DNA of 64,000 nucleotides from Paraphysomonas bandaiensis (GCA_965644295.1 CBFFRP010000077.1:1-64000), one strand, 5' to 3'; shown: positions 13,639-64,000, counted from the first letter of the stretch. Numbers and translations are program-made. The notes: a model not told the origin generated them from the letters alone.

Positions 13639-14878
13639 TTTATGTTGTAATGGGGGGGGGAAGCAGTGAAGTGATGCTGTCCGATACAGTTCAGCAGGAT
13701 CCCCTCGATTTACTGCACGAAAGGGCCGGTCATGTTGCTAAGGGAAAACTACTGGAGGCTCATAGACATATATATGCTGATCAAGGGAACAGGGTTACAG
13801 CGACATCATTTACCTAAGACTACCAAAAAGAAGTGTGAGACCAGTTTGCGCAAGTGGTGTGCTAAGGCGAAGATCACTAGACATGCATTTCGAGGACAAA
13901 GTGACCAGAATGTGGAGATGAAGGCGACAGCATTCCTGGAGCGTATTACAGTGGATATTTCGGTTTATATGAATTGTCCATCTGTGGAGGGGTATAAGTA
14001 CGCACTTGTATTTGTAGATACGGCTACGAAAGAATTCTGGGAATACGGTCTACGAACGAGAACTGGGGATGAAGTGTTAAAATGCGTGAAGCATCTCTGT
14101 GAAGTCAGGCTACCAAAATACCCAGGGTGGAACAGGATACAGCAGTACCATGCTGATGGTGGACCAGAGTTGATGGACAGGCGAATCATAGAATACTTGT
14201 TACAAAAATTTGGAACCACATTCTCCTACACTCCTAGGGAGACACCAGAATTAAACGGTGTTTCAGAACGGAAATTCAGGACACTAGTAGGAGAAATGAC
14301 ATTATCGCTTTTATTGTCATCAGGTATGCCAAAAGCGGAGTGGTGGAAAGCCTTTAGACATGCATGCTGGGTTCTTAGGAGATTACCCACAAAGGCCTAT
14401 AGAGGGTGGATGTCACCCAACGAGTGTGTTCCTGGAGGAACGGTGCCAGATTTTTCTTGGTTACGGAAATGGGGGTGCAAGGCGTACGTTCTCATCCCGA
14501 AGGCAGATCGCAGGAAAGACTGGGAAGAAAAGGCACAGACTGGATACTTTGTAGGGTTCCCAGAGGATCAAATGGGATACCAAGTATTGATTGGAGATAC
14601 TATAGTTACGTCTGTGCATGTTTTATTCGATGAATCTGTGCCTGAGAGAACGGCGGATTATTATCGAGAAATGGACGAGGCCATGGTTGCTGTGGATCCT
14701 CAGGAAAGAAATATTAGAGACTTCGATTACTTAATCGGAAAGACCCATGAAGATGGCGGCCACCAATACAAGACCACACGAATATTGGTTCGAAAAGGTT
14801 TGACTGTAGGGTATAGATCCCTATTGTCTGGTGGTGCGGAGCAAGTGGAAGATAAGACTCCTATTCACATCGCCGATA

Positions 14879-15209
14879 CACTAGTGAAATAAGCAAGTTC
14901 AAAAGGTAGTTCATAAGGTAGTTCAAAAGGTAGTACGTCCTGCAAAAAAGTTCAAAAGGTACTTCAAAAGGTAGTTCGTAAAAAACGTGTAGAGTGTGAA
15001 AGTAAAAAAGGTAGTTCATAAAGTAGTTTATAAAAGGTAGTTAAAAATGTGCAAACCTGTAAACATTTTGTCGAAAAGTTCATAAGATAGTTCATAAGGT
15101 CAGGTAGTTCATGAAAAAATGAACTACCATATGAACTGCTTTTAAACTTAATCGAACTACCTTATGAACTTCTTTTGAACTTCTTTTGAACTTCTCCATT
15201 TCACTAGTG
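14879..15209. mobile_element. Non-autonomous CMC-type (CACTA/Chapaev-like) element
   Basis: Termini CACTAGTGAAAT...ATTTCACTAGTG, 4-bp TSD GATA, subterminal AAGGTAGTTC repeats. Excision restores the Copia frame (HIADIKRM). Confidence 0.85.
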
Positions 15210-18613: not shown

Positions 18614-19233
18614 GGCAGGATGAAACTATCTTAATTAGATATTATATATAAGGCACTCGGAAACGTTACACAATCAATCCAGAACCCATATCATACAAGG
18701 CAGGACTAACATATATACAAGTTGCATCGCGAACCTTCATATGAAAACACACACCACATCACATAGAGTCAATGTCTCTAATTTTCTCCATTCTTCTTAC
18801 CAGTGTAAAGTGTAAGTGAAGGCTTTACGGAGCACAGCGGATGGACACCAGGTAACACTGCCAACACAGTTGTTCACCTCACATTGCTGGTTGAAAGCAG
18901 CAGTAGTATGGATGAGCGGAGAAGTGTCCTTACGATATGAACACTCGTGCATACGAGGGACATGGCGTTGTGTGTGTTAGTTGATTGGGTGTGTAGTTAT
19001 TGAAGTGTACTCTATACTGCTGTATACAGGTACATGTGGAGAGTGTATAGTGTACGGCCATATGGGACTGTTTTTTGGTTTGTGGGGGCCCCGATTTACC
19101 AGGTTTGTAGGTATACTCTCTCTATATATACAGTACGTACACTGTATATAAACGTACTCCGTAGTCGTGGGGTTGCAAGTCAAGTTCATACTACGTAATG
19201 ATGAGTGCCTGTTTTTTTAGGACGAGTGGGACC

Positions 19234-20425
19234 TATAAACAACTCAGGTCTTGCAACCTAAGATCACTGAAAAGATATGAAATGGTTGTTTATCGAAACA
19301 ACAAAACAGAATGCTATAATAATAACTCTTTAAGAAACCAACAGCCAGAAACACAAGCTCCCCTGTATCCTGCAATCTAAAGCTCCCAATAGACAGATCA
19401 GTCAACCAACTATGTTAATTTCATAGAGAATTATTATTAAAAACTAAGTTACAAGCGAAACAAAAGACAGACCCCTAGTCTAAAGACTCCTCCTCATACA
19501 CAGGACATTGAATGCAACCACAACCGTACAATATGCTCATACATGTACTACACTACATACGATTCATATCCTACATCGTTTATAGTCAAAAACGCCCTGA
19601 AATACGCCTAAATAGGTCCTTTCCAAAAACCTCCGATTTTTGAGTCCCAAAACCCCAAAAATCCCCAATTTTTTTGAGAATTGCAGAAAATCGCCGATTT
19701 TCGAGCCACAAACACCCAAAATGACAATATTCGAATCCACAAAAATTGCAAGCACATTTCATGACAACGTGAAATACACAATCGCCAACTCATGCATAAT
19801 ACCGACAAAATGCAATCGGGTTCAAAAGCTTACAATCGAACGGTTAAATATCATTTCCTTGCAAGAGTGTGTACTTTAGACTGGACCATACAAATACACT
19901 CATATTCAGATCACTAACATGCCCATGACACCTCTGCATCTGCGTCCAATGGCACCTTACGAATTCCTCCCCATTCCGGAGAAAATCAACGGTGTATGGC
20001 AATGGAAAATAATCGTATATCATAGTCCGGAACGATGAGCAAGCACATAGAGCTGTTCAAAAACATCAGAAAGCTTCTCATAATGATGGGTGGACTACGA
20101 ATATCGCACATGCGGTACCAATCAATGCTTCCTGACCCAAAACGCTATGACACCGACTACCGTATGGATATAGGCGTAAACCGACGGGTAGCAATCGCGT
20201 AGATCAAAGAAAACGTGTGTTCGAGGGCAAATCCTAGTTGTCTGTCGTCTTGCCCTCGTAATAATAATCTGTATCTCTTGTTGTCACCAATCTTATACAA
20301 AACAAGCTACATATACCCTACATATTATGTTATCATATCGTTATTGCATTAATATAGTTATCAATATTATTATGATGATGTCATTAAACGTGTAAAAGGG
20401 TGTTATAAAAGCCCACGGCTTTACA
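19234..20425 (-). repeat. 3' LTR of the Gypsy element
   Basis: Direct repeat of 25936-27127. Reads TGTAAAG...GTTTATA on the minus strand. Confidence 0.95.
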
Positions 20426-20455
20426 TTACCCTTTCTCCCCCCCCGGATGCCGTAG

Positions 20456-23400
20456 CTACTCCTGAATAATTTTGGGATAAGCCGCAGCCAGCGACGCATC
20501 AACCAAAATCATGCGAGTAGGGTCAAAATCCTTCTGGGATCCCCAACAGTAAACCAAATAGTTGTCGAAGGCATAGTTGGAACCGTTGAGATTAAAACGG
20601 GCGCTAATCTTGCGTTTGGAATTCTTGTGATACCAATGGGTGTACGTGAATTCCATGACATACGCAGCCGTGGCATAATCCGGTAAACCAAGACTCTCGT
20701 ACCACAGGTCACCGTAGAACCTGAGATCAACATAAACAGTATCTCCAACCGACACTGTTGTGATATTCTCTTTCCTCATTGAAGAAATAAAACGCTTCGC
20801 AGTAAACGAGTCGTATGCGAGGTGCCGCAAGTAAGGCCTAGACTCACAAAAATCGTAATATGCCTCACACTGAATATCCGGTGTCCATGGAATGTCCAGG
20901 ATATCGCCGTCCGCATACTTCACCTTGAAGACCATCGTAGATTTGGTTCGTGAATCTCCCGTATATGAAAGAATCTCCTCCACCTTAAATTGTTCATGGT
21001 CTCGCATCGCCGCCTCAATAGCCGATTCCTTATCTCCGAAAAATGGCTCAAGATCAGAGACAGAGTATTCCCGAATCCCCCCGGTAAGAAGATTTCGAAT
21101 TTGAACATCATTCTTGTATTGCCGTACCACTTCGAAAGGACCCTTCATCCTCGAGGATAATTTCGGATGTGGTTTAGCACCAGCGTCGAACATAACAAAA
21201 TCGCCTGGACAATACTGGTTTTGTTTGGCAGGATCCAAACCCGCTTCCGCTCGTTTCTCAACTAGAGACTTCTGGTAATCTGCTGATATCTGGCGAACTA
21301 GAGCTAAGTAATCGTTCAGCCTTTTCAACAGCTGATGAGACGGATCATTGTCTCTTCCCTGGGCAGCCAAAAGATTCTTATAGATAGAATCCTGGGACCC
21401 AAACGTCAGTTCGAACGCAGAATACCCCGTCTCACTACTCTCGTGGGTATTCAGAATGAACATGATAGTGGCAAGTAACAGTTCGTCCTCCAAAACAGCA
21501 TCAGCCTCGATTCGCTTGTCAAAACAAATAGCCCGGATGTGACGAACCACTTCCTTAATAATACGCTCACATCCGTTGACATGCCTGTTGGCAATACTAA
21601 AAACATGACGAAGTCCTGACAACTTAACCAGTTCTGCGAAAAGTTCTGATTTGAGATCAGGACCCATATCTGATATAATCATATCCGTGAGCCCGTATGT
21701 ACACCAGCACTTCCACACTGCTGTAGCTAAATTGATAGCTGTCATTCCTTTCACCGCATATAGGTACACCAATTTCGTAAACAAATTAACCATGACCACA
21801 ATATGCGTGTAACCAGATTTAGAAACAGGTGTAATAGCAACCGCGTCAATTCCCAAAGCACTCCTGGAATGAGGCGGTTTTAAATGTCTAGTGATAGGAA
21901 TCAATCGCTGCTTCAGCTCTCGCCTATTCTTCTGACAGTTGATACATTCGTCCACGAAGTCTGCAACCACCTTGAAAGGCACGCCGTGTCCCGGAAATTG
22001 CCTACACAGACGTTTCCACGTCTCTTTCGCACCCCAGTGTCCTGCTTGCGCGTTGTGAACCTCTTTGATAGCCTGATAATAATCTATCCTCTGTACCTCC
22101 GTAGGCGGCGCGATCTCTTGAACGTCGTCCTCAAAATCGTCTTTTTCAAAGATGTTATGCAGTGTCACGAAGTTCACTTCATCTGAGTCGAAATCGTCAC
22201 TTTCGTCCACAAATCCGGACAAATACAGCAATCTTGACAAGCAATCCGCAACCACATTGTTCTTCCCTGGGATATGACGAATCAAAAAGTCAAAATCCTG
22301 CAAATAAATTCTCCATCGAATTATCTTCGCAACTTCTGATGCCTCCATCCACACAAGGTTGTTGTGGTCCGTCTCGATTGTAAATTTCTTTCCTCTCAGA
22401 TAAAACGAAAATTTCTTGACTGAATAGAATATACCAAAACCCTCCTTCTCAATAGTACACCACTTCAAGGCTTGCTCTGACAATTTCTTGGAACAGATAG
22501 CAATAGTTTGCTGTTGAATCGGACTAGACCCAGTTCCCTCAACAGTCTGGAAAAGAATGCCTGCCACTCCATAGTCACTAGCATCTGTCCTAAGTGTCCA
22601 CTCAAGATCATAATTCGGATAAAACAAAGCACAAGACTGTTGCAAACCACTCTTATAGTTTTCAAACTCCTGCCTATAATCGTGCTGCCATGTCGTTTCT
22701 TCCCAATTAAAACTACTCTTAGTCATATCCGTAAGATGTTTGACCAAATCTGAGTAATTCTGAACAAATGGAGCAAAGAATACTCCCAGACCCAACAAAG
22801 ATCTAATCTTCTTACATCTATTTCCATTCTCTGGAAAAGGAATCTTCAATAAAGCCTCTTTCCTATCGTCCGTGAGCTCGAAACTATTGTGCCTTACCAA
22901 ATAGCCAAAAAACTTGATCTCCCTAAATCCTAACCAGGTCTTTGCAAATTTCAACACAACTCCATGTTCAATGCATCTATCCAGGAAAATCTCCAGCTTC
23001 TTATACGCATCATCAAAATCATGTGCCAATAACAGAACATTATCAAATATACACAGCGCCCATTCCAGATCTCCAAACAATTTGACTACCGCTTCTTGCA
23101 ACACACTAATCCCTGGAGACACTCCCTCCGGAAGGAATAAAGGCTGAAATTGGCCCCACGGTGTTTGAACTGACAATTTTTCAGATGTGTTCTCGTGCAA
23201 CCTGATCTGATGGAACGCATTCGTGAGGTCAATGTCCATAAATATCTTATAGCCAATAATACGATCCAACTCATGTCTTACATTAGGAACTGTATAGTGT
23301 GGACTTGGAATGTACTTGTTGATTTGCACGTAATCCCCACAAATCCTAATAAAAGGTTTCGTGGCTTTTGGCGCGATCACCAAACAAGAAGCCCATGGCG

Positions 23401-24394
23401 ACCTACTAGGAACATAGATGTAACCACACAGTCTCCTAAACTCCTTCTCCGCATCCTCATATAATCTAGGATTTACGGGTCTTGCCTTCGGCTTGATCCT
23501 AGGAGGCAAATTCTCAGCGAACTTGATATTCAACGGATCCACTCCTTTTATACCTTCCCACCGCTCTGGAACAAATACCTCTACTCCCTTAGTCCTCAAT
23601 AACTCCAGCACCGGTCGCGCTGCTGAGAACTCTGGAGACACGTGTTCACCAAACATATCCTCGAACTCGCTCAAAGCTTCCTCTCTAGTTTTTCCAAGAA
23701 AACTTGAGGCAAATCCGAACTGCGAAGGGTCCGGAACATCCAATTCTTCAGGTGCTACCTCCCTACTACTATCACACCACGGCTGCAATAATTCTTCAAC
23801 CGCATTCAACAACAAATCATCCTCGGTAACATCGTCCTCACGCCTTTTAATAAAACTTACTTCTGATTCAATTCGTTCAATAGTCCTTCCTTTAAGCATA
23901 AATAGAAAATAATCCCATAGATCCTTAACGATAGCCGGAAGTCCAATGATAATATCGTTGCTACCCATATCAGCAACAATGAAATCCCCGTCATATAACA
24001 CGAACTCTCCCTTGGAGTCTTCTCTCTCAAACCTCAATTTTAATTTCACTACAAAACTACACTTCATTCTCGACGTTTTATCGGCAAATCCTATAACTGT
24101 TTCTTTTTTTATGACTTTGTTTTCACACACATGATTTCTAAACGTCTCAAACAAATCCTTGGAAATGAAGTTAGATGTTAGGGCTCCAGTGTCGAACAAT
24201 ATTCCACGCACAGATATTATATAGTTATCATCACATACAATGCTTCCCCCAGAATGAGCCAATGTCAAGTCTTTTCGTTCTCGCGTATTACAGACATTCA
24301 TCAAATTTCTGAGGAAAACTCGACTAACAGTCTCAGGATCATTCAAACCGTACAATATTTCTTCGTGATCCTGCGAACCATTAGCCTCGCACAT
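20456..24394 (-). CDS. pol: Gypsy Pol: protease, RT, RNase H, integrase, chromo-like domain, C-terminal extension
   Basis: LFDTGA; DIDLTNAFHQ; CIFDNVLL; LRTDASDYG; ETDHNNL; HHCC (HNAQAGHWG...CINC); ISDMG; KGPF; VKYADG. Confidence 0.95.
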   Translation of the reverse strand: MCEANGSQDHEEILYGLNDPETVSRVFLRNLMNVCNTRERKDLTLAHSGGSIVCDDNYIISVRGILFDTGALTSNFISKDLFETFRNHVCENKVIKKETVIGFADKTSRMKCSFVVKLKLRFEREDSKGEFVLYDGDFIVADMGSNDIIIGLPAIVKDLWDYFLFMLKGRTIERIESEVSFIKRREDDVTEDDLLLNAVEELLQPWCDSSREVAPEELDVPDPSQFGFASSFLGKTREEALSEFEDMFGEHVSPEFSAARPVLELLRTKGVEVFVPERWEGIKGVDPLNIKFAENLPPRIKPKARPVNPRLYEDAEKEFRRLCGYIYVPSRSPWASCLVIAPKATKPFIRICGDYVQINKYIPSPHYTVPNVRHELDRIIGYKIFMDIDLTNAFHQIRLHENTSEKLSVQTPWGQFQPLFLPEGVSPGISVLQEAVVKLFGDLEWALCIFDNVLLLAHDFDDAYKKLEIFLDRCIEHGVVLKFAKTWLGFREIKFFGYLVRHNSFELTDDRKEALLKIPFPENGNRCKKIRSLLGLGVFFAPFVQNYSDLVKHLTDMTKSSFNWEETTWQHDYRQEFENYKSGLQQSCALFYPNYDLEWTLRTDASDYGVAGILFQTVEGTGSSPIQQQTIAICSKKLSEQALKWCTIEKEGFGIFYSVKKFSFYLRGKKFTIETDHNNLVWMEASEVAKIIRWRIYLQDFDFLIRHIPGKNNVVADCLSRLLYLSGFVDESDDFDSDEVNFVTLHNIFEKDDFEDDVQEIAPPTEVQRIDYYQAIKEVHNAQAGHWGAKETWKRLCRQFPGHGVPFKVVADFVDECINCQKNRRELKQRLIPITRHLKPPHSRSALGIDAVAITPVSKSGYTHIVVMVNLFTKLVYLYAVKGMTAINLATAVWKCWCTYGLTDMIISDMGPDLKSELFAELVKLSGLRHVFSIANRHVNGCERIIKEVVRHIRAICFDKRIEADAVLEDELLLATIMFILNTHESSETGYSAFELTFGSQDSIYKNLLAAQGRDNDPSHQLLKRLNDYLALVRQISADYQKSLVEKRAEAGLDPAKQNQYCPGDFVMFDAGAKPHPKLSSRMKGPFEVVRQYKNDVQIRNLLTGGIREYSVSDLEPFFGDKESAIEAAMRDHEQFKVEEILSYTGDSRTKSTMVFKVKYADGDILDIPWTPDIQCEAYYDFCESRPYLRHLAYDSFTAKRFISSMRKENITTVSVGDTVYVDLRFYGDLWYESLGLPDYATAAYVMEFTYTHWYHKNSKRKISARFNLNGSNYAFDNYLVYCWGSQKDFDPTRMILVDASLAAAYPKIIQE

Positions 24395-24397
24395 TTG

Positions 24398-25867
24398 TCA
24401 AGTCACTCCACCAGGCCTCGGCAAAATCTTTCGCGGCCCTTTGGAATCATCTGCCATCATCTGAGACAGCTTCTTCATCATCCATTTCCGGGTTTCCGTT
24501 GCAACTGCTCCATTATGACCCTGGACATGCTTACATTCCTTCCCTTTGTAGCAGTTCCCATACAACGCATACGCAACGCAACCACGGGTTGGATTAACAG
24601 TCTTCTCTAGGTTCATCACCTGTTCTATAGCTTCCTTATCAGACTCTGGTTCGCCGAGCAACATCTCCTCAACCTCATTCTCGAAATCATCATCTGACAT
24701 CCCGTCATCCTTGACCACAACTATCGGGTCAACCTCCTTGTCATCTAAATCACTGTAGAAATCATCCTCAACTCGGTCCGCAAACTGCACGTTGTTTAAA
24801 GATTTCGGTTTCTCCTTTGCAACGTATCCATTGTCCCGATTCCTCGAACTCCTTTGAATTTGCTTCCTACTGAAATCGGACCCTTCATAAGGCACCAATC
24901 TGATGTTCTTGGACGCCTCATAATGCTCACTCGCCTTGGAAACGTATGTATCCAGAAACTCTTCAACATTACCATAATTAGTATCCGTCACCCTTGGAAT
25001 CTCAGCCAGAACTCGTTTGTTGTAAGACTCGTCGATCAACTCCAAAAATACTTGAGCCGATCCAAACTCTTTTCCTCCAACCGGTGGACACTTAGTACTA
25101 TTGGCCTCCATCATGATAGTAAACGTTCGCATAAAAATACTCTTTCGCTTCAAAATCTCTTGAAAAAACAGCTCATGTGTATTCGGCCGCACTGATTTCC
25201 AATCCAGTGGCTTAAAATATCTCAGCGCGTATCGCAAAGTCTCAATGAACTCAACTTTGGACAACACCTTGGTCTCCTTAGCCATCAGCTCACAGAATTT
25301 CTGAGCACTCAACTTAACAAACATTTTATCCGTCAAGCTATTGTTGAACATAAGCAGGTTCCGAACACGCCTGCTAACTATCTGGGCTGGCTCAAGCTTA
25401 ATCCCATTGATCTGTTCATATTCAAACCATTGGATGATAAACTTTGTAAAATCACTAAGCTCCATCGAATCCAGAAAAATATGCTTATGGGATGGCTTTT
25501 CAACGTTGATGATGACATGCTTTGGAACCTCCATTCCCTCTGAAGACTCAGCCTCCCTCATGAATACAGATGTCCTTCGCTCTTTCTTCTTGCCTTTGTC
25601 GTCGGCAGCCCTGCCACTCTCTCTGGTATGTCCCTGCTGCTCTTCACGCTGGTCACGGATGGCCTCATCTACTTCCTTCTGAGCTTCCTCCAGCTCATTA
25701 ACTAAAACTTCTTCATTAATAGACATTCTGGACTCCAGATTATCTACCCTACTGGCAGTTGCTACACACAACTTAGTGACGTTCTCCAAATTGAGAGCAA
25801 TTCCCCGTAACATTTCCTTAACTTCATCTAACTCAGATGAACCAACAGGACCCTCCGAATCAGACAT
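24398..25867 (-). CDS. gag: Gypsy Gag (489 aa) with an N-terminal coiled coil and a C-terminal CCCH-like finger
   Basis: First ORF after the 5' LTR, in frame with pol across one TGA. Confidence 0.85.
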   Translation of the reverse strand: MSDSEGPVGSSELDEVKEMLRGIALNLENVTKLCVATASRVDNLESRMSINEEVLVNELEEAQKEVDEAIRDQREEQQGHTRESGRAADDKGKKKERRTSVFMREAESSEGMEVPKHVIINVEKPSHKHIFLDSMELSDFTKFIIQWFEYEQINGIKLEPAQIVSRRVRNLLMFNNSLTDKMFVKLSAQKFCELMAKETKVLSKVEFIETLRYALRYFKPLDWKSVRPNTHELFFQEILKRKSIFMRTFTIMMEANSTKCPPVGGKEFGSAQVFLELIDESYNKRVLAEIPRVTDTNYGNVEEFLDTYVSKASEHYEASKNIRLVPYEGSDFSRKQIQRSSRNRDNGYVAKEKPKSLNNVQFADRVEDDFYSDLDDKEVDPIVVVKDDGMSDDDFENEVEEMLLGEPESDKEAIEQVMNLEKTVNPTRGCVAYALYGNCYKGKECKHVQGHNGAVATETRKWMMKKLSQMMADDSKGPRKILPRPGGVT

Positions 25868-25935
25868 TTCGATATATATCTATAATCTACAATAATGATA
25901 TCTTCACTTACGTGTTTTACCGTGAGTAAATTTAC

Positions 25936-27127
25936 TATAAACAACTCAGGTCTTGCAACCTAAGATCACTGAAAAGATATGAAATGGTTGTTTATCGAAA
26001 CAACAAAACAGAATGCTATAATAATAACTCTTTAAGAAACCAACAGCCAGAAACACAAGCTCCCCTGTATCCTGCAATCTAAAGCTCCCAATAGACAGAT
26101 CAGTCAACCAACTATGTTAATTTCATAGAGAATTATTATTAAAAACTAAGTTACAAGCGAAACAAAAGACAGACCCCTAGTCTAAAGACTCCTCCTCATA
26201 CACAGGACATTGAATGCAACCACAACCGTACAATATGCTCATACATGTACTACACTACATACGATTCATATCCTACATCGTTTATAGTCAAAAACGCCCT
26301 GAAATACGCCTAAATAGGTCCTTTCCAAAAACCTCCGATTTTTGAGTCCCAAAACCCCAAAAATCCCCAATTTTTTTGAGAATTGCAGAAAATCGCCGAT
26401 TTTCGAGCCACAAACACCCAAAATGACAATATTCGAATCCACAAAAATTGCAAGCACATTTCATGACAACGTGAAATACACAATCGCCAACTCATGCATA
26501 ATACCGACAAAATGCAATCGGGTTCAAAAGCTTACAATCGAACGGTTAAATATCATTTCCTTGCAAGAGTGTGTACTTTAGACTGGACCATACAAATACA
26601 CTCATATTCAGATCACTAACATGCCCATGACACCTCTGCATCTGCGTCCAATGGCACCTTACGAATTCCTCCCCATTCCGGAGAAAATCAACGGTGTATG
26701 GCAATGGAAAATAATCGTATATCATAGTCCGGAACGATGAGCAAGCACATAGAGCTGTTCAAAAACATCAGAAAGCTTCTCATAATGATGGGTGGACTAC
26801 GAATATCGCACATGCGGTACCAATCAATGCTTCCTGACCCAAAACGCTATGACACCGACTACCGTATGGATATAGGCGTAAACCGACGGGTAGCAATCGC
26901 GTAGATCAAAGAAAACGTGTGTTCGAGGGCAAATCCTAGTTGTCTGTCGTCTTGCCCTCGTAATAATAATCTGTATCTCTTGTTGTCACCAATCTTATAC
27001 AAAACAAGCTACATATACCCTACATATTATGTTATCATATCGTTATTGCATTAATATAGTTATCAATATTATTATGATGATGTCATTAAACGTGTAAAAG
27101 GGTGTTATAAAAGCCCACGGCTTTACA
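25936..27127 (-). repeat. 5' LTR of the Gypsy element
   Basis: Direct repeat of 19234-20425. Confidence 0.95.
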
Positions 27128-27288
27128 GACCATCCACGGTCCTACAAGTGGAGGGTTGGTCCACTTGAAAAACGTCTCCAAACGAAATGCTGTATGTGGG
27201 AATTCTACACTAAGGCCGTTCCTTAGGACATGTCAAAATCAAAAAAATGGTATTATTTTGACAGTGGGGTGCGTTTTGCCATTCCTTA

Positions 27289-30505: not shown

Positions 30506-31652
30506 CTATAACCAAATCAATTCACGCTTCCTTCTGGCAACAGAATGATGAACAATAAGGTCACGACGTAGCTCATAGTGTGTAGTCTGCACTTCTTCTT
30601 CGATATGATCTGCAATAAAAGGACGCAACATAGTTCCTTCTGCGACAGGTGTATTACCATTTCTTGCGCGATTCATTGCTCTGGTTTCCATTACTCTGCG
30701 CTGAGTACCATCGTACAGGTCATCGTACTCGTCATCTGGGTTTGATTCATTCCAGTCATACGCCTCTTCCCACCTCTTATCATATCCATCATAACTCAGC
30801 AATATGTTATGCAGAATGCAACTTGTAAAGAAGACATTATCAATTTGGTCTTTGCTATGAAGTTCAATTGCATTGCACAAAAGACGAAATCGCTTCTTCA
30901 AAATGCCGAATACATCTTCAACATCTTTACGCACAGACTCTAAATTGCAGCTCCAGCTTGCCGTCTTCTCGCAACTGGTATGTTTTAGAGGACACTGCAA
31001 ACAACGCCATTTATGGTAACCCCCATCACAAATTAAATAATAGCCTCTGTGAGTGGTCAAACTACCATCCTCATTGTATAGCTGGAATTCCTTATTGCTA
31101 TATAAGCCATCATCTTTAATATTCATAACATGTCCATCATATCGCACTATCGTTTTATCGTTTCTTGCACCATAATGACTCGTTGTACAGGATAAAATGC
31201 GCTTTGTATGGTCTACGCAGCACTCATATGCGAGAGTGGGATACCCTTCCTTTCCTTTACAAGACGATCTCAAAGGAAAAGGACATTTGTCCCACCTAAT
31301 GTGTACACAGTCTATAGAGCCAATAGCCCCAGGAAAGCCAAGGATGCGGTATATTCTTTCCACCTTCTTTATTTCCTCGTCACTCCGAGGTGGTTTAATG
31401 AAGATATCGTAAAATGCTTGCGCAAACTTTTCACAGAAATCATGGAAAAACGTTCTTACAGTTTCTTCGTGCATCGCTCCAATCGGTTCTTGCCTTACGG
31501 TTCCTGTTTTTAAATCTCCTCTCTCTCCGAAGTTTACTCTTGATCTTCTTCGTCGGATGAAACCACTCCAGCATAATCTTACTGCAGCGTCGTCTCCTCT
31601 TCATACGTTCGAAAGCATTGAACAAACGTGTCATGTTATTCCTGTCTCCCAC
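30506..31652 (-). pseudogene. Harbinger DDE transposase (DDE_Tnp_4/Plant_tran), internally deleted at the N-terminus
   Basis: GFPGAIGSIDCVHIRW, GARNDKT, YYLICDGGY, ESVRKDVEDVFGILKKRF, CILHN. Frame break near 31480. Confidence 0.9.
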
Positions 31653-48195: not shown

Positions 48196-49203
48196 TAGGA
48201 AATTGTTTTCATTATGTATGTAGTATGCATTAACAATTAACACTAATTATGTGAAGTGATTTGAATTAAGAAATTAATGTCATAACTAGAAGTATATATG
48301 ACACCAATTCGGTGGCGTTCTCTTCTACGAAATAAAAAATCTGCTATTTACAAATACAGCTGAATAGTCAATCACGCGTAGACTGTTAATGTCAATCGCG
48401 AGATTTTCGATAAATCGGAATTGTGTCATAATCCGTAAAATATTTCAAGAAAATGTATGCTATTGTGAATGGTTTTCGATTAGAGATGCTGTACGATCAT
48501 CTCCAACATTTCATCAAGGTAATCTTTAGCGTCTTCATTCTGTTCAAGCGTGTGTCTGGGGCGTTTTCTTGGGTGATTCGTACTACGATGCATTCTCTCT
48601 TCATAACTCATGCTTTATATTCTGTCCACAACTTTTAATATGTTTGAGGGTGATATTGTCATCTATAGTAAGATTTTCATGAGCGAAGTCAGGCGGGCTT
48701 CCTAAATCAAGGCAGTGATGCATCAATAACTTAACAATTGGCAATGGAATATTTTGTCCCTTCACCATTATTCTTTTGTTTAGTGGTTTCAACTAGCTCT
48801 TTATGTAAATTGGTCATGAATATGAAAGATATGGGTTATGTTGTTCCTGGACAGATTGCTGCTTCTCTGGAAGTCTAGGGCTCTTTCACTTTCCTTTTCT
48901 CTGTTCTGGTGTCATTACACTACTCATGATAATGCATTGGTGGCATTATTCTACCATTGACTCGTATATGACACCTGTGGTAGCCTGTTAATGGAGTGAC
49001 GTTGGGTCTTACTGAGTGCTGTGAGAAGGACGAAAGCAAAATAAGTACAACTTTCGAAAAAAAAAAGTGAAGTGAAAAAAACATCAGCCTCCTTCGTTGA
49101 AAAAGACCACACTGTAAATTCATATACACAGCAGTTTGGCATACTATATATCAACATCTCCTCATATTATTACCGGATCAAGATAAAGGCGTCAATATTC
49201 AGG

Positions 49204-51033
49204 ATGAAGAGAGCACGAAGTACGGATGATGATGATGACGAATTGAAAAAGTTTATGGAGTTAGCTGAGCAAGATGATACGGAATATCATGAATATGTGC
49301 CAGTGAAGCATAGAAGCTCTTGTAAGACCGAAAAATGTTCGAATACATCAGGTGTTGCTGCTGATATCAGCTCTAATAGTGATCATGTATATAACCAAAC
49401 CAAAACTTTACTGGATGAAGCAGACGCACTCAGAAAATCTCAAGCTTCGATGGATAAAAAGCTGCTCAAACAACAAAAACAACAATCATCTGAGGAGCTA
49501 CTACTTAGAGAAGCGAATCAGGTTCAAACGAATGCTTTACAATCTAACGAGGAAATTGCACAGGGTGTTCGATATTCAGAGAGTATGAGGTCGAGTTGGT
49601 CAGCTCCTACATATATTCTAGCTCAGGGGGAAGGCCATCATGAAGCTGCAAGAAAGAAATGGCATATACTTGTTGAAGGAGAAAAATGTCCTCCTCCTAT
49701 TAAATCTTTTCGTGAAATGAAATTTCCTGTGTGTATTTTGGAAGCAATGAAAGAAAAAGGAATATCTAAACCAACTCCAATACAAGTTCAGGGTATGCCG
49801 GCGATATTGAGTGGTAGGGATATCGTTGGTATAGCTTTCACTGGATCGGGAAAAACGCTAACGTTTTCTCTTCCTATGATTATGTTAGCCCAAGAAGATG
49901 AGGTGAAGCTGCCACTTCAAGCGGGAGAGGGGCCTATTGGCTTAGTCTTGTGTCCCTCTAGAGAACTTGCGAGGCAGACGTTTGAAGTGGTGGACTATTA
50001 CTGTAAATGCTTTAGTAAAAGTAGGGGACTATATACTCCCCTTCGGTCTTTGCTTTGTATTGGTGGTGAAGATAAGCGATGTCAAGTGGATTTTGTTCAA
50101 CGCCATGGTGTTCATTGTATCATTGCTACTCCGGGTCGTATAAATGATTTACTAAATCAGGGACGTATAAACATGCATCTATGCCGATATTTAGTTTTAG
50201 ATGAGGCAGATCGTATGTTAGATTTTGGATTTGACGAAGAAGTACATAGTATTATAAATCACTTCAAACGGCAAAGACAGACCATTTTATTTAGTGCCAC
50301 TATGCCGCAAAAATTTCAAGATTTTGCGAAGCATACACTGGTTCAACCGTTAGTCGTAAATGTTGGGCGGGCCGGTGCAGCGAATTTGGATGTAATTCAA
50401 GAAGTGGAATATGTTAAGTCTGAGGCTAAGATCGTATACCTTCTGGAGTGTCTGCAGAAAACTCCACCTCCAGTAATAATATTTTGTGAAAGGAAGCAAG
50501 ATGTTGATGATATACACGAATATTTACTTGTCAAGGGTGTGGCAGCAGCGAGTATTCACGGTGGGAAGGACCAAGATGAACGTAATGAATCCATACGAAT
50601 GTTTAAAGACGGAACCAAAGATGTTCTAGTTGCAACTGATATTGCAGCTAAGGGACTTGATTTTCCTGACATTCAGCATGTTATTAATTTTGATATGCCC
50701 GCTGAAATCGAGAATCACGTTCATCGCATTGGTAGGACTGGTCGATGCGGTCGTACAGGTGTTGCCACCACTTTCATAAACAAAGACGTGGATGAAAGTA
50801 CATTGTTGGATTTAAAACATTTGTTAATGGAGGCTAAACAACGAGTACCTCCTGTACTACAAGCGCTTGATGACCCAGATGACGATTTAATAGATGTTGG
50901 AGGAACTAAAGGGTGTGCATTCTGTGGTGGGTTGGGGCATAGAATTACTGACTGTCCGAAACTTGACAAAGATGCCCGCAGACTGGGACAAGGAAGAAAA
51001 GATGTCATTGGTACAACCGGAGGTGATTGGTAG
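49204..51033 (+). CDS. DDX41: DEAD-box RNA helicase DDX41/Abstrakt, intronless
   Basis: IAFTGSGKT, DEADRMLD, SATMP, VNVGRAGAANLDVIQEVEYVK, HRIGRTGR, C-terminal CAFCGGLGHRITDCPKL. Confidence 0.97.
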   Translation: MKRARSTDDDDDELKKFMELAEQDDTEYHEYVPVKHRSSCKTEKCSNTSGVAADISSNSDHVYNQTKTLLDEADALRKSQASMDKKLLKQQKQQSSEELLLREANQVQTNALQSNEEIAQGVRYSESMRSSWSAPTYILAQGEGHHEAARKKWHILVEGEKCPPPIKSFREMKFPVCILEAMKEKGISKPTPIQVQGMPAILSGRDIVGIAFTGSGKTLTFSLPMIMLAQEDEVKLPLQAGEGPIGLVLCPSRELARQTFEVVDYYCKCFSKSRGLYTPLRSLLCIGGEDKRCQVDFVQRHGVHCIIATPGRINDLLNQGRINMHLCRYLVLDEADRMLDFGFDEEVHSIINHFKRQRQTILFSATMPQKFQDFAKHTLVQPLVVNVGRAGAANLDVIQEVEYVKSEAKIVYLLECLQKTPPPVIIFCERKQDVDDIHEYLLVKGVAAASIHGGKDQDERNESIRMFKDGTKDVLVATDIAAKGLDFPDIQHVINFDMPAEIENHVHRIGRTGRCGRTGVATTFINKDVDESTLLDLKHLLMEAKQRVPPVLQALDDPDDDLIDVGGTKGCAFCGGLGHRITDCPKLDKDARRLGQGRKDVIGTTGGDW

Positions 51034-55761: not shown

Positions 55762-55834
55762 GGGCGTCTAGCTCAATTGGTAGAGCGCACGCTTCGCATG
55801 CGTGAGGTATTGGGATCGAAGCCCAAGTCGTCCA
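55762..55834 (+). tRNA. trnA-CGC: tRNA-Ala (anticodon CGC)
   Basis: Cloverleaf with a G3-U70 pair, D arm GCTC-AATTGGTA-GAGC, anticodon arm CACGC-TTCGCAT-GCGTG, T loop ATCGAAG, followed by a T9 Pol III terminator. Confidence 0.95.
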
Positions 55835-55996
55835 CTTTTTTTTAGCGCCACTCTACGTCGAGGGCACCCTACACAGTATATATGGTATACTGCGAGGTAC
55901 TGATCATAGGCAATGCATGATGTTTGAAGTCGTATATATGTCGCAATGAGCACAATTTCTTGGGAACGAGTTCGGTTTCCACCATCTAATTTTACA

Positions 55997-62844: not shown

Positions 62845-64000
62845 CTACTTTATATTATTTCTTTTTCCAAAAGGGTTTTTCAACATTTTTTCCTTAGCAC
62901 TTTCTCGTACCACAGGCTTTGCAGATGTTAAGGGTACTGAGGATGGTGACGGAGTAGAACGCTTTTTCGTGGTTGTATTTGACGATATTTGCTTGGAGTT
63001 GTCACTGGTTTCCTCCGTTTTCAATGGACTATCCTTGGAAGCATTGCTGTGAGAAAGTTCAGAATAAGATGGCGGAAGTATGTCGCCGCCAGACACTTCT
63101 GAATCTATAAGAACAGGTTTAGGCGGGTCAACGGTGCTGTCAAATTGGCGAGACTGTAAAGAAATATTCCGCTCGCTTTGGGAGACTGTACTATCACGTA
63201 GGGAGGGATGATTTAAATGTAGTTCGGTCTCGTTCACACTGTGAGTACATTTTAACGAAGGCACCGGAAACGTGGTAGATAATTGGGCAGTAGAATTCTC
63301 TGATGACTCCATCGGCATTACACAGTTACTACTCCAAGAGATGCCCAGCGGAACCATTCCACTGTATGCAGCTTTCTTAAACTCATAAAAGTCGAGAACC
63401 CCATCTCCATTCATGTCCACTTTACTTCCAACTTTAATAGCATAAGCACGTGCTTCATCCCAACTTATTCCAGCAGATACCATGACCAAATTTGTCAGTT
63501 CATTCACATCAAGTGCGTTGCTTCGATCCCTATCGTAGGCCTGAAACATGAGCTCTAATTTCTCATCATTACTTCCATTCGTTAGTTTCGCAAAACCAAT
63601 AGCGATTTCGGTTAAGGAGAGGGCCCCATTTCCATCTAGATCAAAAGCATGAAAAATATCGTAAGCAAACTTTTCCTCGAAATTCAACTGTGGGCTAGTA
63701 AGAGCCTGAATGAACAGCTGGCGATCAATTTCAGAAACATTTTTGTGCTTGAAGTAGTCGTAAAAGTCGCTGATTAAATTGACATCAATATCCTTATTAT
63801 AACGTGCACACTGCTTCTTTATATCCCGTATTGCAACCTCTTTAGATCCCATGTGCAAACCATTTGCGAGGGGCTTCTCACAAGCATTCATTTGAACAGG
63901 GCTGAAGCTTGATGTCGTGTTTGCAGTCAGGTAGATGGTTATACAGGGAATAGTTTCAGTGCGATATAATTCTGCAAAACGAATCATTTCACTGAAGTCA
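62845..64000 (-). CDS. EF-hand calcium-binding protein (NCS/calcineurin-B-like) with a low-complexity tail; 5' end probably beyond the window or spliced
   Basis: EF loops DLDGNGALSLTE, DRDRSNALDVNE, DMNGDGVLDFYE; EKLELMFQAYD. Confidence 0.85.
   Translation of the reverse strand, partial: DFSEMIRFAELYRTETIPCITIYLTANTTSSFSPVQMNACEKPLANGLHMGSKEVAIRDIKKQCARYNKDIDVNLISDFYDYFKHKNVSEIDRQLFIQALTSPQLNFEEKFAYDIFHAFDLDGNGALSLTEIAIGFAKLTNGSNDEKLELMFQAYDRDRSNALDVNELTNLVMVSAGISWDEARAYAIKVGSKVDMNGDGVLDFYEFKKAAYSGMVPLGISWSSNCVMPMESSENSTAQLSTTFPVPSLKCTHSVNETELHLNHPSLRDSTVSQSERNISLQSRQFDSTVDPPKPVLIDSEVSGGDILPPSYSELSHSNASKDSPLKTEETSDNSKQISSNTTTKKRSTPSPSSVPLTSAKPVVRESAKEKMLKNPFGKRNNIK

What the first reader, a model, noticed from the sequence alone, without database searches (positions are those of the whole stretch)
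23040..23051. Apparently active Gypsy whose RT catalytic motif is IFDN, not YxDD
Seen: pol reads ALC-IFDN-VLL at the YxDD position, and the usual MPFG reads LPEG. The element still has intact ORFs, LTRs with no visible difference, and a TSD. Established: both Asp residues of YxDD are nearly invariant in RTs, and the Ty1 D211N substitution of the second Asp keeps polymerase activity but blocks transposition. Inference: this lineage may have a functional two-aspartate RT, possibly with compensating RNase H or priming changes.
Basis: partly seen in the sequence, partly recalled or inferred. Interest (0 to 1): 0.8.

Follow-up and report, generated by a model that had tools for sequence, protein, structure and literature searches.

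The report
Gypsy retrotransposon clade with FDN reverse transcriptase
This intact, freshly inserted Gypsy-type retrotransposon belongs to a large marine (probably diatom) lineage in which the reverse transcriptase always has Asp-Asn instead of the supposedly universal Asp-Asp, always paired with a Glu in the neighbouring motif, so a natural enzyme family seems to work without one of the three "invariant" catalytic aspartates.

Summary
The element spans 19233-27127, with two identical 1193-bp LTRs, open gag and pol frames and a 3-4 bp target duplication.

FDN is a deep lineage trait, not a private mutation or an error.
- **Same genome:** five subfamilies, down to 51% amino-acid identity, all carry [I/L]FDN plus PEG. 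Asn codons alternate AAT/AAC.
- **Public data:** the 120 nearest protein clusters all carry it. So do 144 of 144 single-RT sequences taken from the top 150 clusters of a 1.8-billion-protein library.
- **Tree:** the D-to-N change and the F-to-E change in motif B (the HIV-1 Q151 position) each map once, on the same branch (support 100).
- **Other catalytic residues:** motif A Asp, the first motif C Asp, motif D Lys and the primer grip are invariant.
- **Selection:** RT dN/dS is 0.003-0.08.
- **Independent samples:** marine metagenomes from many studies and two metatranscriptome libraries carry the same codons.

Best reading: an autonomous, recently active element whose RT works with two Asp plus Asn, and Glu as an obligate partner. 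Catalysis was not tested. I found no paper reporting this. Other first-stage readers noted the same motif on other pieces of this genome; none had been followed up.

The parts
25935..27127 (-). 5' LTR (1193 bp; begins TG in element orientation)
   Evidence: 100% identical to 19233-20425 over 1193 bp.
24398..25867 (-). gag ORF (489 aa) ending in an in-frame TGA at 24398-24400; C-terminal Cys/His cluster; no Pfam family
   Evidence: The TGA-C junction is conserved in family copies and in the 67-68% subfamilies.
20456..24394 (-). pol ORF (1312 aa): protease, RT, RNase H, integrase, C-terminal extension
   Evidence: Pfam hits RVT_1 (38.7 bits, weak), RT_RNaseH, RT_RNaseH_2, Integrase_H2C2 and rve.
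24182..24196 (-). protease active-site motif F-D-T-G-A (pol residues 67-71)
23225..23239 (-). RT motif A, M-D-I-D-L; the catalytic Asp is D389, aligned to the Ty3 motif A Asp
   Evidence: This Asp is present in 143 of 143 clade rows.
23123..23134 (-). RT motif B, L-P-E-G; E423 sits at the Ty3 F, MMLV Q190 and HIV-1 Q151 position
   Evidence: Glu is present in 144 of 144 clade rows and absent from all 13 YxDD rows.
23039..23050 (-). RT motif C, I-F-D-N (D451, N452) in place of Y-x-D-D
   Evidence: D and N are each present in 144 of 144 clade rows. Asn is encoded by AAT or AAC in different subfamilies.
22901..22954 (-). RT motif D Lys (K485) and motif E primer grip F-F-G-Y
   Evidence: Invariant in 143-144 of 144 clade rows.
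22235..22591 (-). RNase H domain with the canonical D, E, D, D positions (TDAS, E-K-E, TDH, VAD)
   Evidence: Alignment to the Ty3 RT/RNase H structures; Pfam RT_RNaseH at 82 bits; coordinates.
21560..22057 (-). integrase: H..H / C..C zinc motif and candidate D, D, E residues
   Evidence: Pfam Integrase_H2C2 and rve; coordinates.
20429..20444 (-). polypurine tract (16 purines), 3 nt upstream of the 3' LTR
19233..20425 (-). 3' LTR (1193 bp)
27128..27130 (.). target-site duplication, upstream copy (GTC in element orientation; GGTC if 27131 is included)
19230..19232 (.). target-site duplication, downstream copy (GTC; GGTC if LTR base 19233 is counted as target)

Best explanation
This is an autonomous, very recently inserted Ty3/gypsy-type LTR retrotransposon. 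Its layout is gag, an in-frame UGA, then pol with protease, RT, RNase H and integrase.

It belongs to a large, old and monophyletic marine clade. The host is probably a diatom, so the clade may be the 'GyDi' cluster. In this clade RT motif C is x-[F/Y/H/W]-D-N instead of Y-x-D-D, and motif B is P-E-G instead of P-F/Q-G.

Shown: Asn and Glu are fixed across the clade, they arose together, and they are kept by purifying selection. All other catalytic residues are intact, and many identical intact copies exist.

Inferred: the RT is catalytically competent by itself. It would use the motif A Asp (D389) and the first motif C Asp (D451) as the two metal-binding carboxylates. Asn452 would act as a neutral ligand or hydrogen-bond partner at the primer-end metal site. 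Glu423, in the pocket that holds the sugar of the incoming dNTP, would be the obligate partner that makes the Asn tolerable, by balancing charge or re-positioning a metal or water. The metal preference may differ (Mn2+ against Mg2+), as in the Ty1 D211N mutant.

Gag-Pol is most likely made by read-through of the conserved UGA-C stop.
For: - **Trait of the whole lineage:** 44 RT copies from five subfamilies of this genome (100, 88, 68, 62 and 51% aa identity) all read [I/L]FDN and PEG. So do 120 of 120 nearest 90%-identity clusters. In the 50%-identity library, every single-RT hit (39-65% identity) has xxDN plus xEG. The only YxDD hits are multi-RT giants at 23-28% identity.
- **Single origin:** on a maximum-likelihood tree of 157 RT domains, the 144 DN rows form one side of a branch with SH-aLRT 100. 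N/D needs one change and E/F needs one change.
- **Selection on the residue:** the Asn codon alternates AAT/AAC and the Glu codon GAA/GAG between subfamilies, and neither ever becomes GAT/GAC or a non-Glu codon.
- **Selection on the domain:** RT dN/dS is 0.003-0.08 in unsaturated pairs. In older pairs pN is 0.05-0.10 while synonymous sites are saturated.
- **Active-site context:** the fingers Arg, motif A Asp, E-G, D-N, motif D Lys and the F-F-G primer grip are invariant in 143-144 of 144 rows. The RT/RNase H fold is predicted with confidence and matches Ty3, CaMV and MMLV RTs.
- **Recent activity:** the 1193-bp LTRs are identical. At least 12 copies have a 100% identical RT-RNase H protein, and 15 of the 19 copies at 99-100% identity over the whole query have a 1313-codon open frame. 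Several LTR pairs lie about 6.7 kb apart elsewhere in the genome. The clade gives at least 99 scored matches out of 308 candidates.
- **Not an assembly artefact:** 18 runs from many independent studies hold most of the element. Contigs of two metatranscriptome libraries cover nearly all of the internal region at 95-100% identity (most at 99% or more), with no variant at the motif.
- **Biochemical precedent:** Ty1 D211N (second Asp of YXDD) still polymerises, 223-fold slower and with a preference for Mn2+ (PMC2148107).
Against: - No enzymatic or transposition data exist for any member.
- In Ty1 the same substitution abolishes transposition (PMC2148107).
- The same genome also holds many intact canonical Y-L-D-D Gypsy elements and other YADD/FADD RTs that could in principle supply RT.
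- The role proposed for Glu423 rests on perfect co-variation and on its aligned position only. I could not measure distances, because the model's coordinates are not exposed.
- Outgroup sampling in the tree is thin (13 rows), and the motif columns were left in the alignment.
- RNA-library contigs show presence in RNA libraries, not proven transcription.
- No recognisable tRNA-type primer-binding site was found.
Confidence: 0.8

Rival explanations
1. The RT domain of this lineage is catalytically dead or crippled. The elements are copied in trans by the RT of canonical Y-L-D-D Gypsy elements (or other RTs) in the same cell.
For: Canonical YLDD Gypsy elements with long open frames, and YADD/FADD RTs, coexist in the genome. 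Ty1 D211N cannot transpose (PMC2148107).
Against: An unused RT domain would decay. Instead RT dN/dS is 0.003-0.08. The active-site residues, including Asn and Glu, are the most conserved positions across 144 clusters at 39-65% identity. The DN clade is the most numerous Gypsy type in this genome (308 candidates, against about 40 listed YLDD-type matches). LTR-element RT normally acts in cis, inside particles built from the element's own Gag-Pol (established knowledge).
Confidence: 0.07
2. The genomic Asn codon is recoded to Asp in the mRNA: A-to-I editing of the first base would turn AAT/AAC into GAT/GAC. The protein would then carry a normal D-D.
For: A single A-to-G change in the RNA would restore Asp. 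No evidence was found for it.
Against: Contigs from two metatranscriptome libraries and one probable RNA library cover the codon and show no T>C at 23041 on the plus strand. This idea does not explain the equally fixed Glu in motif B. Contigs can hide minority variants.
Confidence: 0.02
3. It is a private mutation, a sequencing or assembly error, or a dead copy of an otherwise normal YxDD family.
For: None was found.
Against: All copies and all subfamilies carry FDN. So do all public relatives. Independent runs agree at the codons. Synonymous turnover of the Asn codon shows long-term retention.
Confidence: 0.01

Closest known systems
Ty3/gypsy (Metaviridae) LTR retrotransposons, with Ty3 RT as the solved reference (PDB 4OL8, 7Q5B)
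   Same: The layout is LTR-gag-pol-LTR with the order protease, RT, RNase H, integrase. The best sequence match among solved structures is Ty3 RT (E 4.6e-38). The RT/RNase H fold matches. A polypurine tract and a short target duplication are present.
   Different: Motif C is I-F-D-N rather than Y-L-D-D, and motif B is P-E-G rather than P-F-G. The Pfam RVT_1 score is only 38.7 bits, and some clade members have no precomputed RVT_1 hit at all. Gag and pol are separated by an in-frame UGA, not by a frameshift as in Ty3 (established knowledge for Ty3). No tRNA-type primer-binding site was recognised.
GyDi (Ty3/gypsy from diatoms) cluster of Maumus et al. 2009 (PMC2806351)
   Same: It is described as a diatom-specific cluster of Ty3/gypsy-like elements (Thalassiosira, Pseudo-nitzschia) with a typical PR-RT-RH-IN order. 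The present genome carries several silicon-transporter genes and occurs in marine plankton metagenomes, so the host is probably a diatom.
   Different: Identity with GyDi could not be tested, because no GyDi sequence is reachable with these tools. The paper's text never mentions the catalytic motif. Neither do the Leptocylindrus TE paper or the Tara Oceans RT survey.
Ty1 RT D211N laboratory mutant (Pandey, Patel and Gabriel 2008, PMC2148107)
   Same: It has the same substitution at the same position, the second Asp of YXDD changed to Asn. It shows that such an RT can still polymerise.
   Different: In Ty1 it is an engineered defect: kpol falls 223-fold, Mn2+ is preferred, transposition is lost, and RNase H suppressors restore only 5-10%. 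Here the Asn is the fixed wild-type state of a thriving natural clade, and it always comes with Glu in motif B.
Viral RNA-dependent RNA polymerases with G-D-N (Mononegavirales L) or A-D-N (Birnaviridae VP1) in motif C (recalled from my own knowledge, not checked here)
   Same: These are natural right-hand polymerases in which the second motif C Asp is replaced by Asn and the enzyme is active.
   Different: They are a different polymerase class (RdRp, not RT) with no homology beyond the palm core. No comparable natural case in an RT turned up in my searches.

Membership tests
Ty3/gypsy (Metaviridae) LTR retrotransposon | Two long terminal repeats in direct orientation flanking an internal coding region | tested here: met
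   The 1193-bp LTRs at 19233-20425 and 25935-27127 are 100% identical.
Ty3/gypsy (Metaviridae) LTR retrotransposon | pol domain order protease, RT, RNase H, integrase (integrase after RT) | tested here: met
   Pfam domain order and motif positions.
Ty3/gypsy (Metaviridae) LTR retrotransposon | RT closest to Ty3/gypsy and caulimovirus RTs by sequence and fold | tested here: met
   Ty3 4OL8 at E 4.6e-38 and CaMV 8R0S at 3.4e-30. Foldseek top hits are 8R0S, 4OL8 and MMLV.
Ty3/gypsy (Metaviridae) LTR retrotransposon | Canonical RT catalytic triad: motif A Asp plus Y-x-D-D in motif C | tested here: not met
   The motif A Asp is present, but motif C is I-F-D-N. This is the point of the finding. I file the element as a variant within the group on the other features, not as a canonical member.
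Ty3/gypsy (Metaviridae) LTR retrotransposon | Target-site duplication of 4-6 bp, a polypurine tract and a tRNA primer-binding site | tested here: inconclusive
   The polypurine tract is clear. The duplication is only 3-4 bp (GTC/GGTC). There is no TGG-type primer-binding site after the 5' LTR and no complement of 9 nt or more for self-priming.
Chromoviruses (chromodomain-bearing Ty3/gypsy) | Chromodomain at the C-terminus of integrase | tested here: inconclusive
   A chromodomain-like stretch begins at pol residue 1136, but Pfam reports no chromo domain at E <= 0.01.
GyDi lineage of diatom Ty3/gypsy elements | Clusters with GyDi1/GyDi2 of Thalassiosira pseudonana in an RT phylogeny | not testable with these tools
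The only supports are a probable diatom host (silicon-transporter genes) and the paper's description.

The most novel reading that the evidence does not exclude
A whole, ecologically abundant clade of reverse transcriptases has re-wired the polymerase active site. The third 'invariant' aspartate is replaced by Asn, and a Glu appears at the nucleotide-sugar pocket (HIV-1 Q151 position) as its obligate functional partner. Metal use may also differ (Mn2+ against Mg2+). This would be the first natural exception to the three-aspartate rule for RTs, and nature's own solution to the Ty1 D211N defect.
Probability: 0.45. Interest if true: 0.85.

Novelty: new variant of a known kind. Interest (0 to 1): 0.68.

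Why it matters
The RT literature states that all RTs contain three conserved aspartates, two of them in YXDD (PMC2148107). Mutating them is the standard way to kill an RT. Here a large, diversified and recently active retrotransposon clade of marine plankton carries D-N as its wild type, always together with P-E-G.

If the enzyme is active, several things follow:
- It defines the true minimal catalytic requirement of RTs.
- It offers a natural system to explain why Ty1 D211N polymerises but cannot transpose.
- It may give RTs with unusual metal dependence, speed or fidelity.
- Motif- or HMM-based RT surveys of ocean data may under-score this clade. Pfam RVT_1 gives only about 39-57 bits for these elements, and some members have no precomputed RVT_1 hit.

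Tried and rejected
- **Full-length sister copies.** I used a DNA search with the LTR as a proxy.
- **Extra Asp two residues before the motif A Asp (D-x-D).** I considered it as the compensating carboxylate. It is invariant in the 59-sequence alignment. In the wider clade it is replaced by N, E, A, K and others, and changes about 10 times on the tree. I rejected it as an obligate partner.
No perfect complement of 9 nt or more exists between the first 25 nt after the 5' LTR and the LTR. The window's only tRNA gene (Ala-CGC) was not compared with the post-LTR sequence. Priming stays unresolved.
- **RNA editing of Asn to Asp.** RNA-library contigs show no such variant.
- **Host and clade taxonomy.** The protein Atlas gave only generic RT clusters. 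Two NCBI assembly accessions that hold relatives (GCA_050043615.1 and GCA_009712145.1) were not found in any paper. Host identity rests only on silicon-transporter genes and the marine sources.
- **Literature.** Searches for IFDN, for FDN plus retrotransposon, for YXDD plus diatom or stramenopile, and for YXDD plus Ty3 plus asparagine returned nothing that describes this motif.
- **Geometry.** Distances between Glu423, Asn452 and the metal site could not be measured, because the structure tool returns no coordinates.

Full report
**1. What is at the coordinates**

The feature lies on the minus strand. The pol ORF (20456-24394, 1312 aa) reads ...EWALC-IFDN-VLLLAH..., and 25 residues upstream it reads ...LF-LPEG-VSPG.... 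The IFDN codons (ATA TTT GAT AAT) occupy 23039-23050, one base to the left of the reported 23040-23051. LPEG is at 23123-23134.

HMMER alignments to solved RTs fix the register:
- Against Ty3 RT (4OL8/7Q5B; E 4.6e-38), I-F-D-N aligns with Y-L-D-D and the E of PEG aligns with the F of M-P-F-G.
- Against XMRV/MMLV RT, it aligns with Y-V-D-D and with the Q of L-P-Q-G. By established motif B alignments that Q is the HIV-1 Q151 position.
- An AlphaFold2 model of the RT-RNase H part (59-sequence alignment, mean pLDDT 85.3) puts D-N at the tip of a beta hairpin, as in every RT. Its best fold matches are the CaMV, Ty3 and MMLV RTs.

**2. The element**

- The LTRs are much longer than the repeat finder first showed: 1193 bp each (19233-20425 and 25935-27127), with no mismatch.
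- In element orientation the LTR starts with TG.
- A 16-nt polypurine tract sits 3 nt before the 3' LTR.
- The flanks share GTC, or GGTC if the last LTR base is target-derived.
- gag (489 aa, no Pfam family) and pol are in the same frame, separated by one TGA followed by C.
- The same TGA-C junction is kept in the family's other copies and in the 67-68% subfamilies. I therefore infer that Gag-Pol is made by stop-codon read-through.
- pol has a protease D-T-G, all RNase H carboxylates, an integrase zinc motif and candidate D, D, E residues.
- After the 5' LTR there is no TGG-type primer-binding site. I found no complement of 9 nt or more that would indicate Tf1-like self-priming.

**3. Private mutation or lineage trait?**

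A six-frame search of the window's own 62.5-Mb genome with the RT-RNase H part gave 99 scored matches out of 308 candidates. They fall into groups at about 100, 88, 68, 62 and 51% amino-acid identity, and many have open frames of about 1300 codons. I extracted the three motifs from 44 full-length RT copies covering all groups. Every one reads [I/L]-F-D-N, x-P-E-G and D-x-D.

At the DNA level the Asn codon is AAT in some subfamilies and AAC in others. Glu is GAA or GAG. The neighbouring codons also show synonymous turnover. Asn and Glu have thus been retained through long divergence.

Outside the genome the picture is the same:
- The 120 nearest 90%-identity clusters of the 5.8-billion-protein collection (54-100% identity, mostly ENA, JGI and Logan metagenome assemblies) all have x-F-D-N and x-P-E-G.
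- In the exhaustive HMMER search of 1.84 billion 50%-identity representatives, every single-RT protein among the best 150 (39-65% identity) has x-[F/Y/H/W/A]-D-N and x-E-G.
- The only Y-x-D-D hits in that list are giant multi-RT proteins at 23-28% identity, and these have P-F-G.

On a maximum-likelihood tree of 157 RT domains, the 144 D-N rows form one side of a branch with SH-aLRT 100. N/D needs one change and E/F needs one change. Two caveats apply: there are only 13 outgroup rows, and the motif columns were not removed.

**4. Is the RT domain in use?**

- **Selection on the domain.** Nei-Gojobori comparisons between subfamily lineages give RT dN/dS of 0.003, 0.019, 0.022 and 0.084 for pairs with unsaturated dS. 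In older pairs pN is 0.05-0.10 with saturated synonymous sites.
- **Conservation of catalytic residues.** Across the 144 clade rows, the invariant positions are the ones a working polymerase needs: the fingers Arg, motif A Asp (D389), E423-G424, D451-N452, the motif D Lys (K485) and the F-F-G primer grip.
- **Recent activity.** At least 12 copies have a 100% identical RT-RNase H protein, and 15 of the 19 copies at 99-100% identity over the whole query have the full 1313-codon frame. LTR pairs about 6.7 kb apart occur on several other contigs. This copy's LTRs are identical.
- **Independent samples.** The element's words are held at 0.84-0.93 by marine metagenome runs. The 20 holding runs come from 14 studies, and two metatranscriptome libraries hold 0.53-0.71. 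Laid contigs from those RNA libraries cover almost the whole internal region at 95-100% identity (most at 99% or more). No difference is listed between 22742 and 23195. That excludes a sequencing error, and, at the level of consensus contigs, RNA editing of Asn to Asp.

**5. Rivals**

The same genome holds many intact canonical Gypsy elements with Y-L-D-D, plus YADD/FADD-type RTs. Supply of RT in trans is therefore conceivable. It does not fit the strong purifying selection on the D-N RT domain, nor the clade's numerical dominance among Gypsy elements here. I give it 0.07. A private mutation or an error is excluded. RNA recoding is unsupported.

**6. How it probably works**

Established background (PMC2148107):
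- RTs are held to have three conserved aspartates.
- In Ty1, changing the second Asp of YXDD to Asn leaves nucleotide binding intact, lowers kpol 223-fold and shifts the preference to Mn2+.
- The same change abolishes transposition, which RNase H suppressors partly rescue.

My inference is as follows. In this clade D389 and D451 bind the two metals. N452 acts as a neutral ligand or hydrogen-bond partner at the primer-end metal. E423 is the only residue that co-varies perfectly with the Asn, and it sits where Q151 of HIV-1 RT lines the dNTP sugar pocket. I propose that it compensates by restoring charge or re-positioning a metal or water.

An extra Asp two residues before the motif A Asp looked like a candidate too. 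It is not universal in the clade and changes about 10 times on the tree.

From my own knowledge, not checked here: natural Asn at this position is known in RNA-dependent RNA polymerases (G-D-N in Mononegavirales L proteins, A-D-N in birnavirus VP1). It is not known in RTs.

**7. Host and known relatives**

The genome has at least six full-length silicon-transporter genes, and the element is found in marine plankton samples. The host is probably a diatom. Other first-stage notes guess 'stramenopile'.

Maumus et al. 2009 describe a diatom-specific Ty3/gypsy cluster, GyDi. The D-N clade may be that cluster, but this could not be tested. Neither that paper, nor the Leptocylindrus TE paper, nor the Tara Oceans RT survey mentions the catalytic motif. 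Targeted full-text searches found no report of it.

**8. Verdict**

Biochemical proof is missing. This is a new variant of a known kind: a Ty3/gypsy lineage with a non-canonical, co-evolved active site (D-N plus P-E-G).

At least eight first-stage notes record the same motif on other pieces of this genome, and none had been followed up.

Noticed in passing
window 24398-24400 (minus strand); also L026-L030: gag and pol share one frame and are separated by a single TGA followed by C. The junction is conserved in family copies and in the 67-68% subfamilies (one L026 copy has TAA). This suggests programmed stop-codon read-through rather than a frameshift.
   Followed up: partly
window 25900-25934 (minus strand, just inside the 5' LTR): There is no TGG-type tRNA primer-binding site after the 5' LTR, and no complement of 9 nt or more in the LTR for Tf1-like self-priming. 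How minus-strand synthesis is primed is unexplained.
   Followed up: partly
window 24398-24560 (minus strand, gag C-terminus): Gag ends with a Cys/His cluster (C-x8-C-x5-C then His) that resembles a CCCH finger rather than the usual CCHC knuckle. Gag has no Pfam match.
   Followed up: no
run X15 laid on window 20426-25934: One run of a coded organism (RNA by guess) covers the element with hundreds of very short contigs at depths in the thousands, some ending in adapter sequence. It looks like a small-RNA library, so the element may be a target of small RNAs.
   Followed up: no
G000:C349:46078-57949: Three LTR-like copies (92% identical to this LTR) lie in the same orientation about 5.3 kb apart. 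This could be a tandem LTR-internal-LTR-internal-LTR array, or a shorter derivative of the family.
   Followed up: no
own genome, LTR matches against RT matches: Sister copies have RT-RNase H proteins identical to this one, but their LTRs are only about 98% identical to this copy's LTR. The LTRs diverge faster than pol, or have been exchanged between copies.
   Followed up: no
window 13732-14892 (+): An ORF with an integrase core and a retroviral SH3-like domain. It is a Copia-type pol fragment unrelated to the element studied.
   Followed up: no
window 30506-31474 (-): An ORF with a PIF/Harbinger-type DDE transposase (Plant_tran, DDE_Tnp_4).
   Followed up: no
window 49072-51033 (+), 62845-63987 (-), 55762-55835 (+): Host genes in the window: a DEAD-box helicase, an EF-hand protein and tRNA-Ala(CGC).
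   Followed up: no
G000: C348, C406, C398, C150, C298, C149, C405: Several full-length silicon-transporter (Silic_transp) genes, each with both halves of the repeat. This points to a diatom or another silicifying host.
   Followed up: partly
proteins P0261, P0278, P0279, P0286, P0289, P0292, P0294: Very long public proteins (2300-3600 aa) contain two to four canonical YxDD RT domains in series. They are probably nested or tandem Gypsy insertions read as one gene.
   Followed up: no
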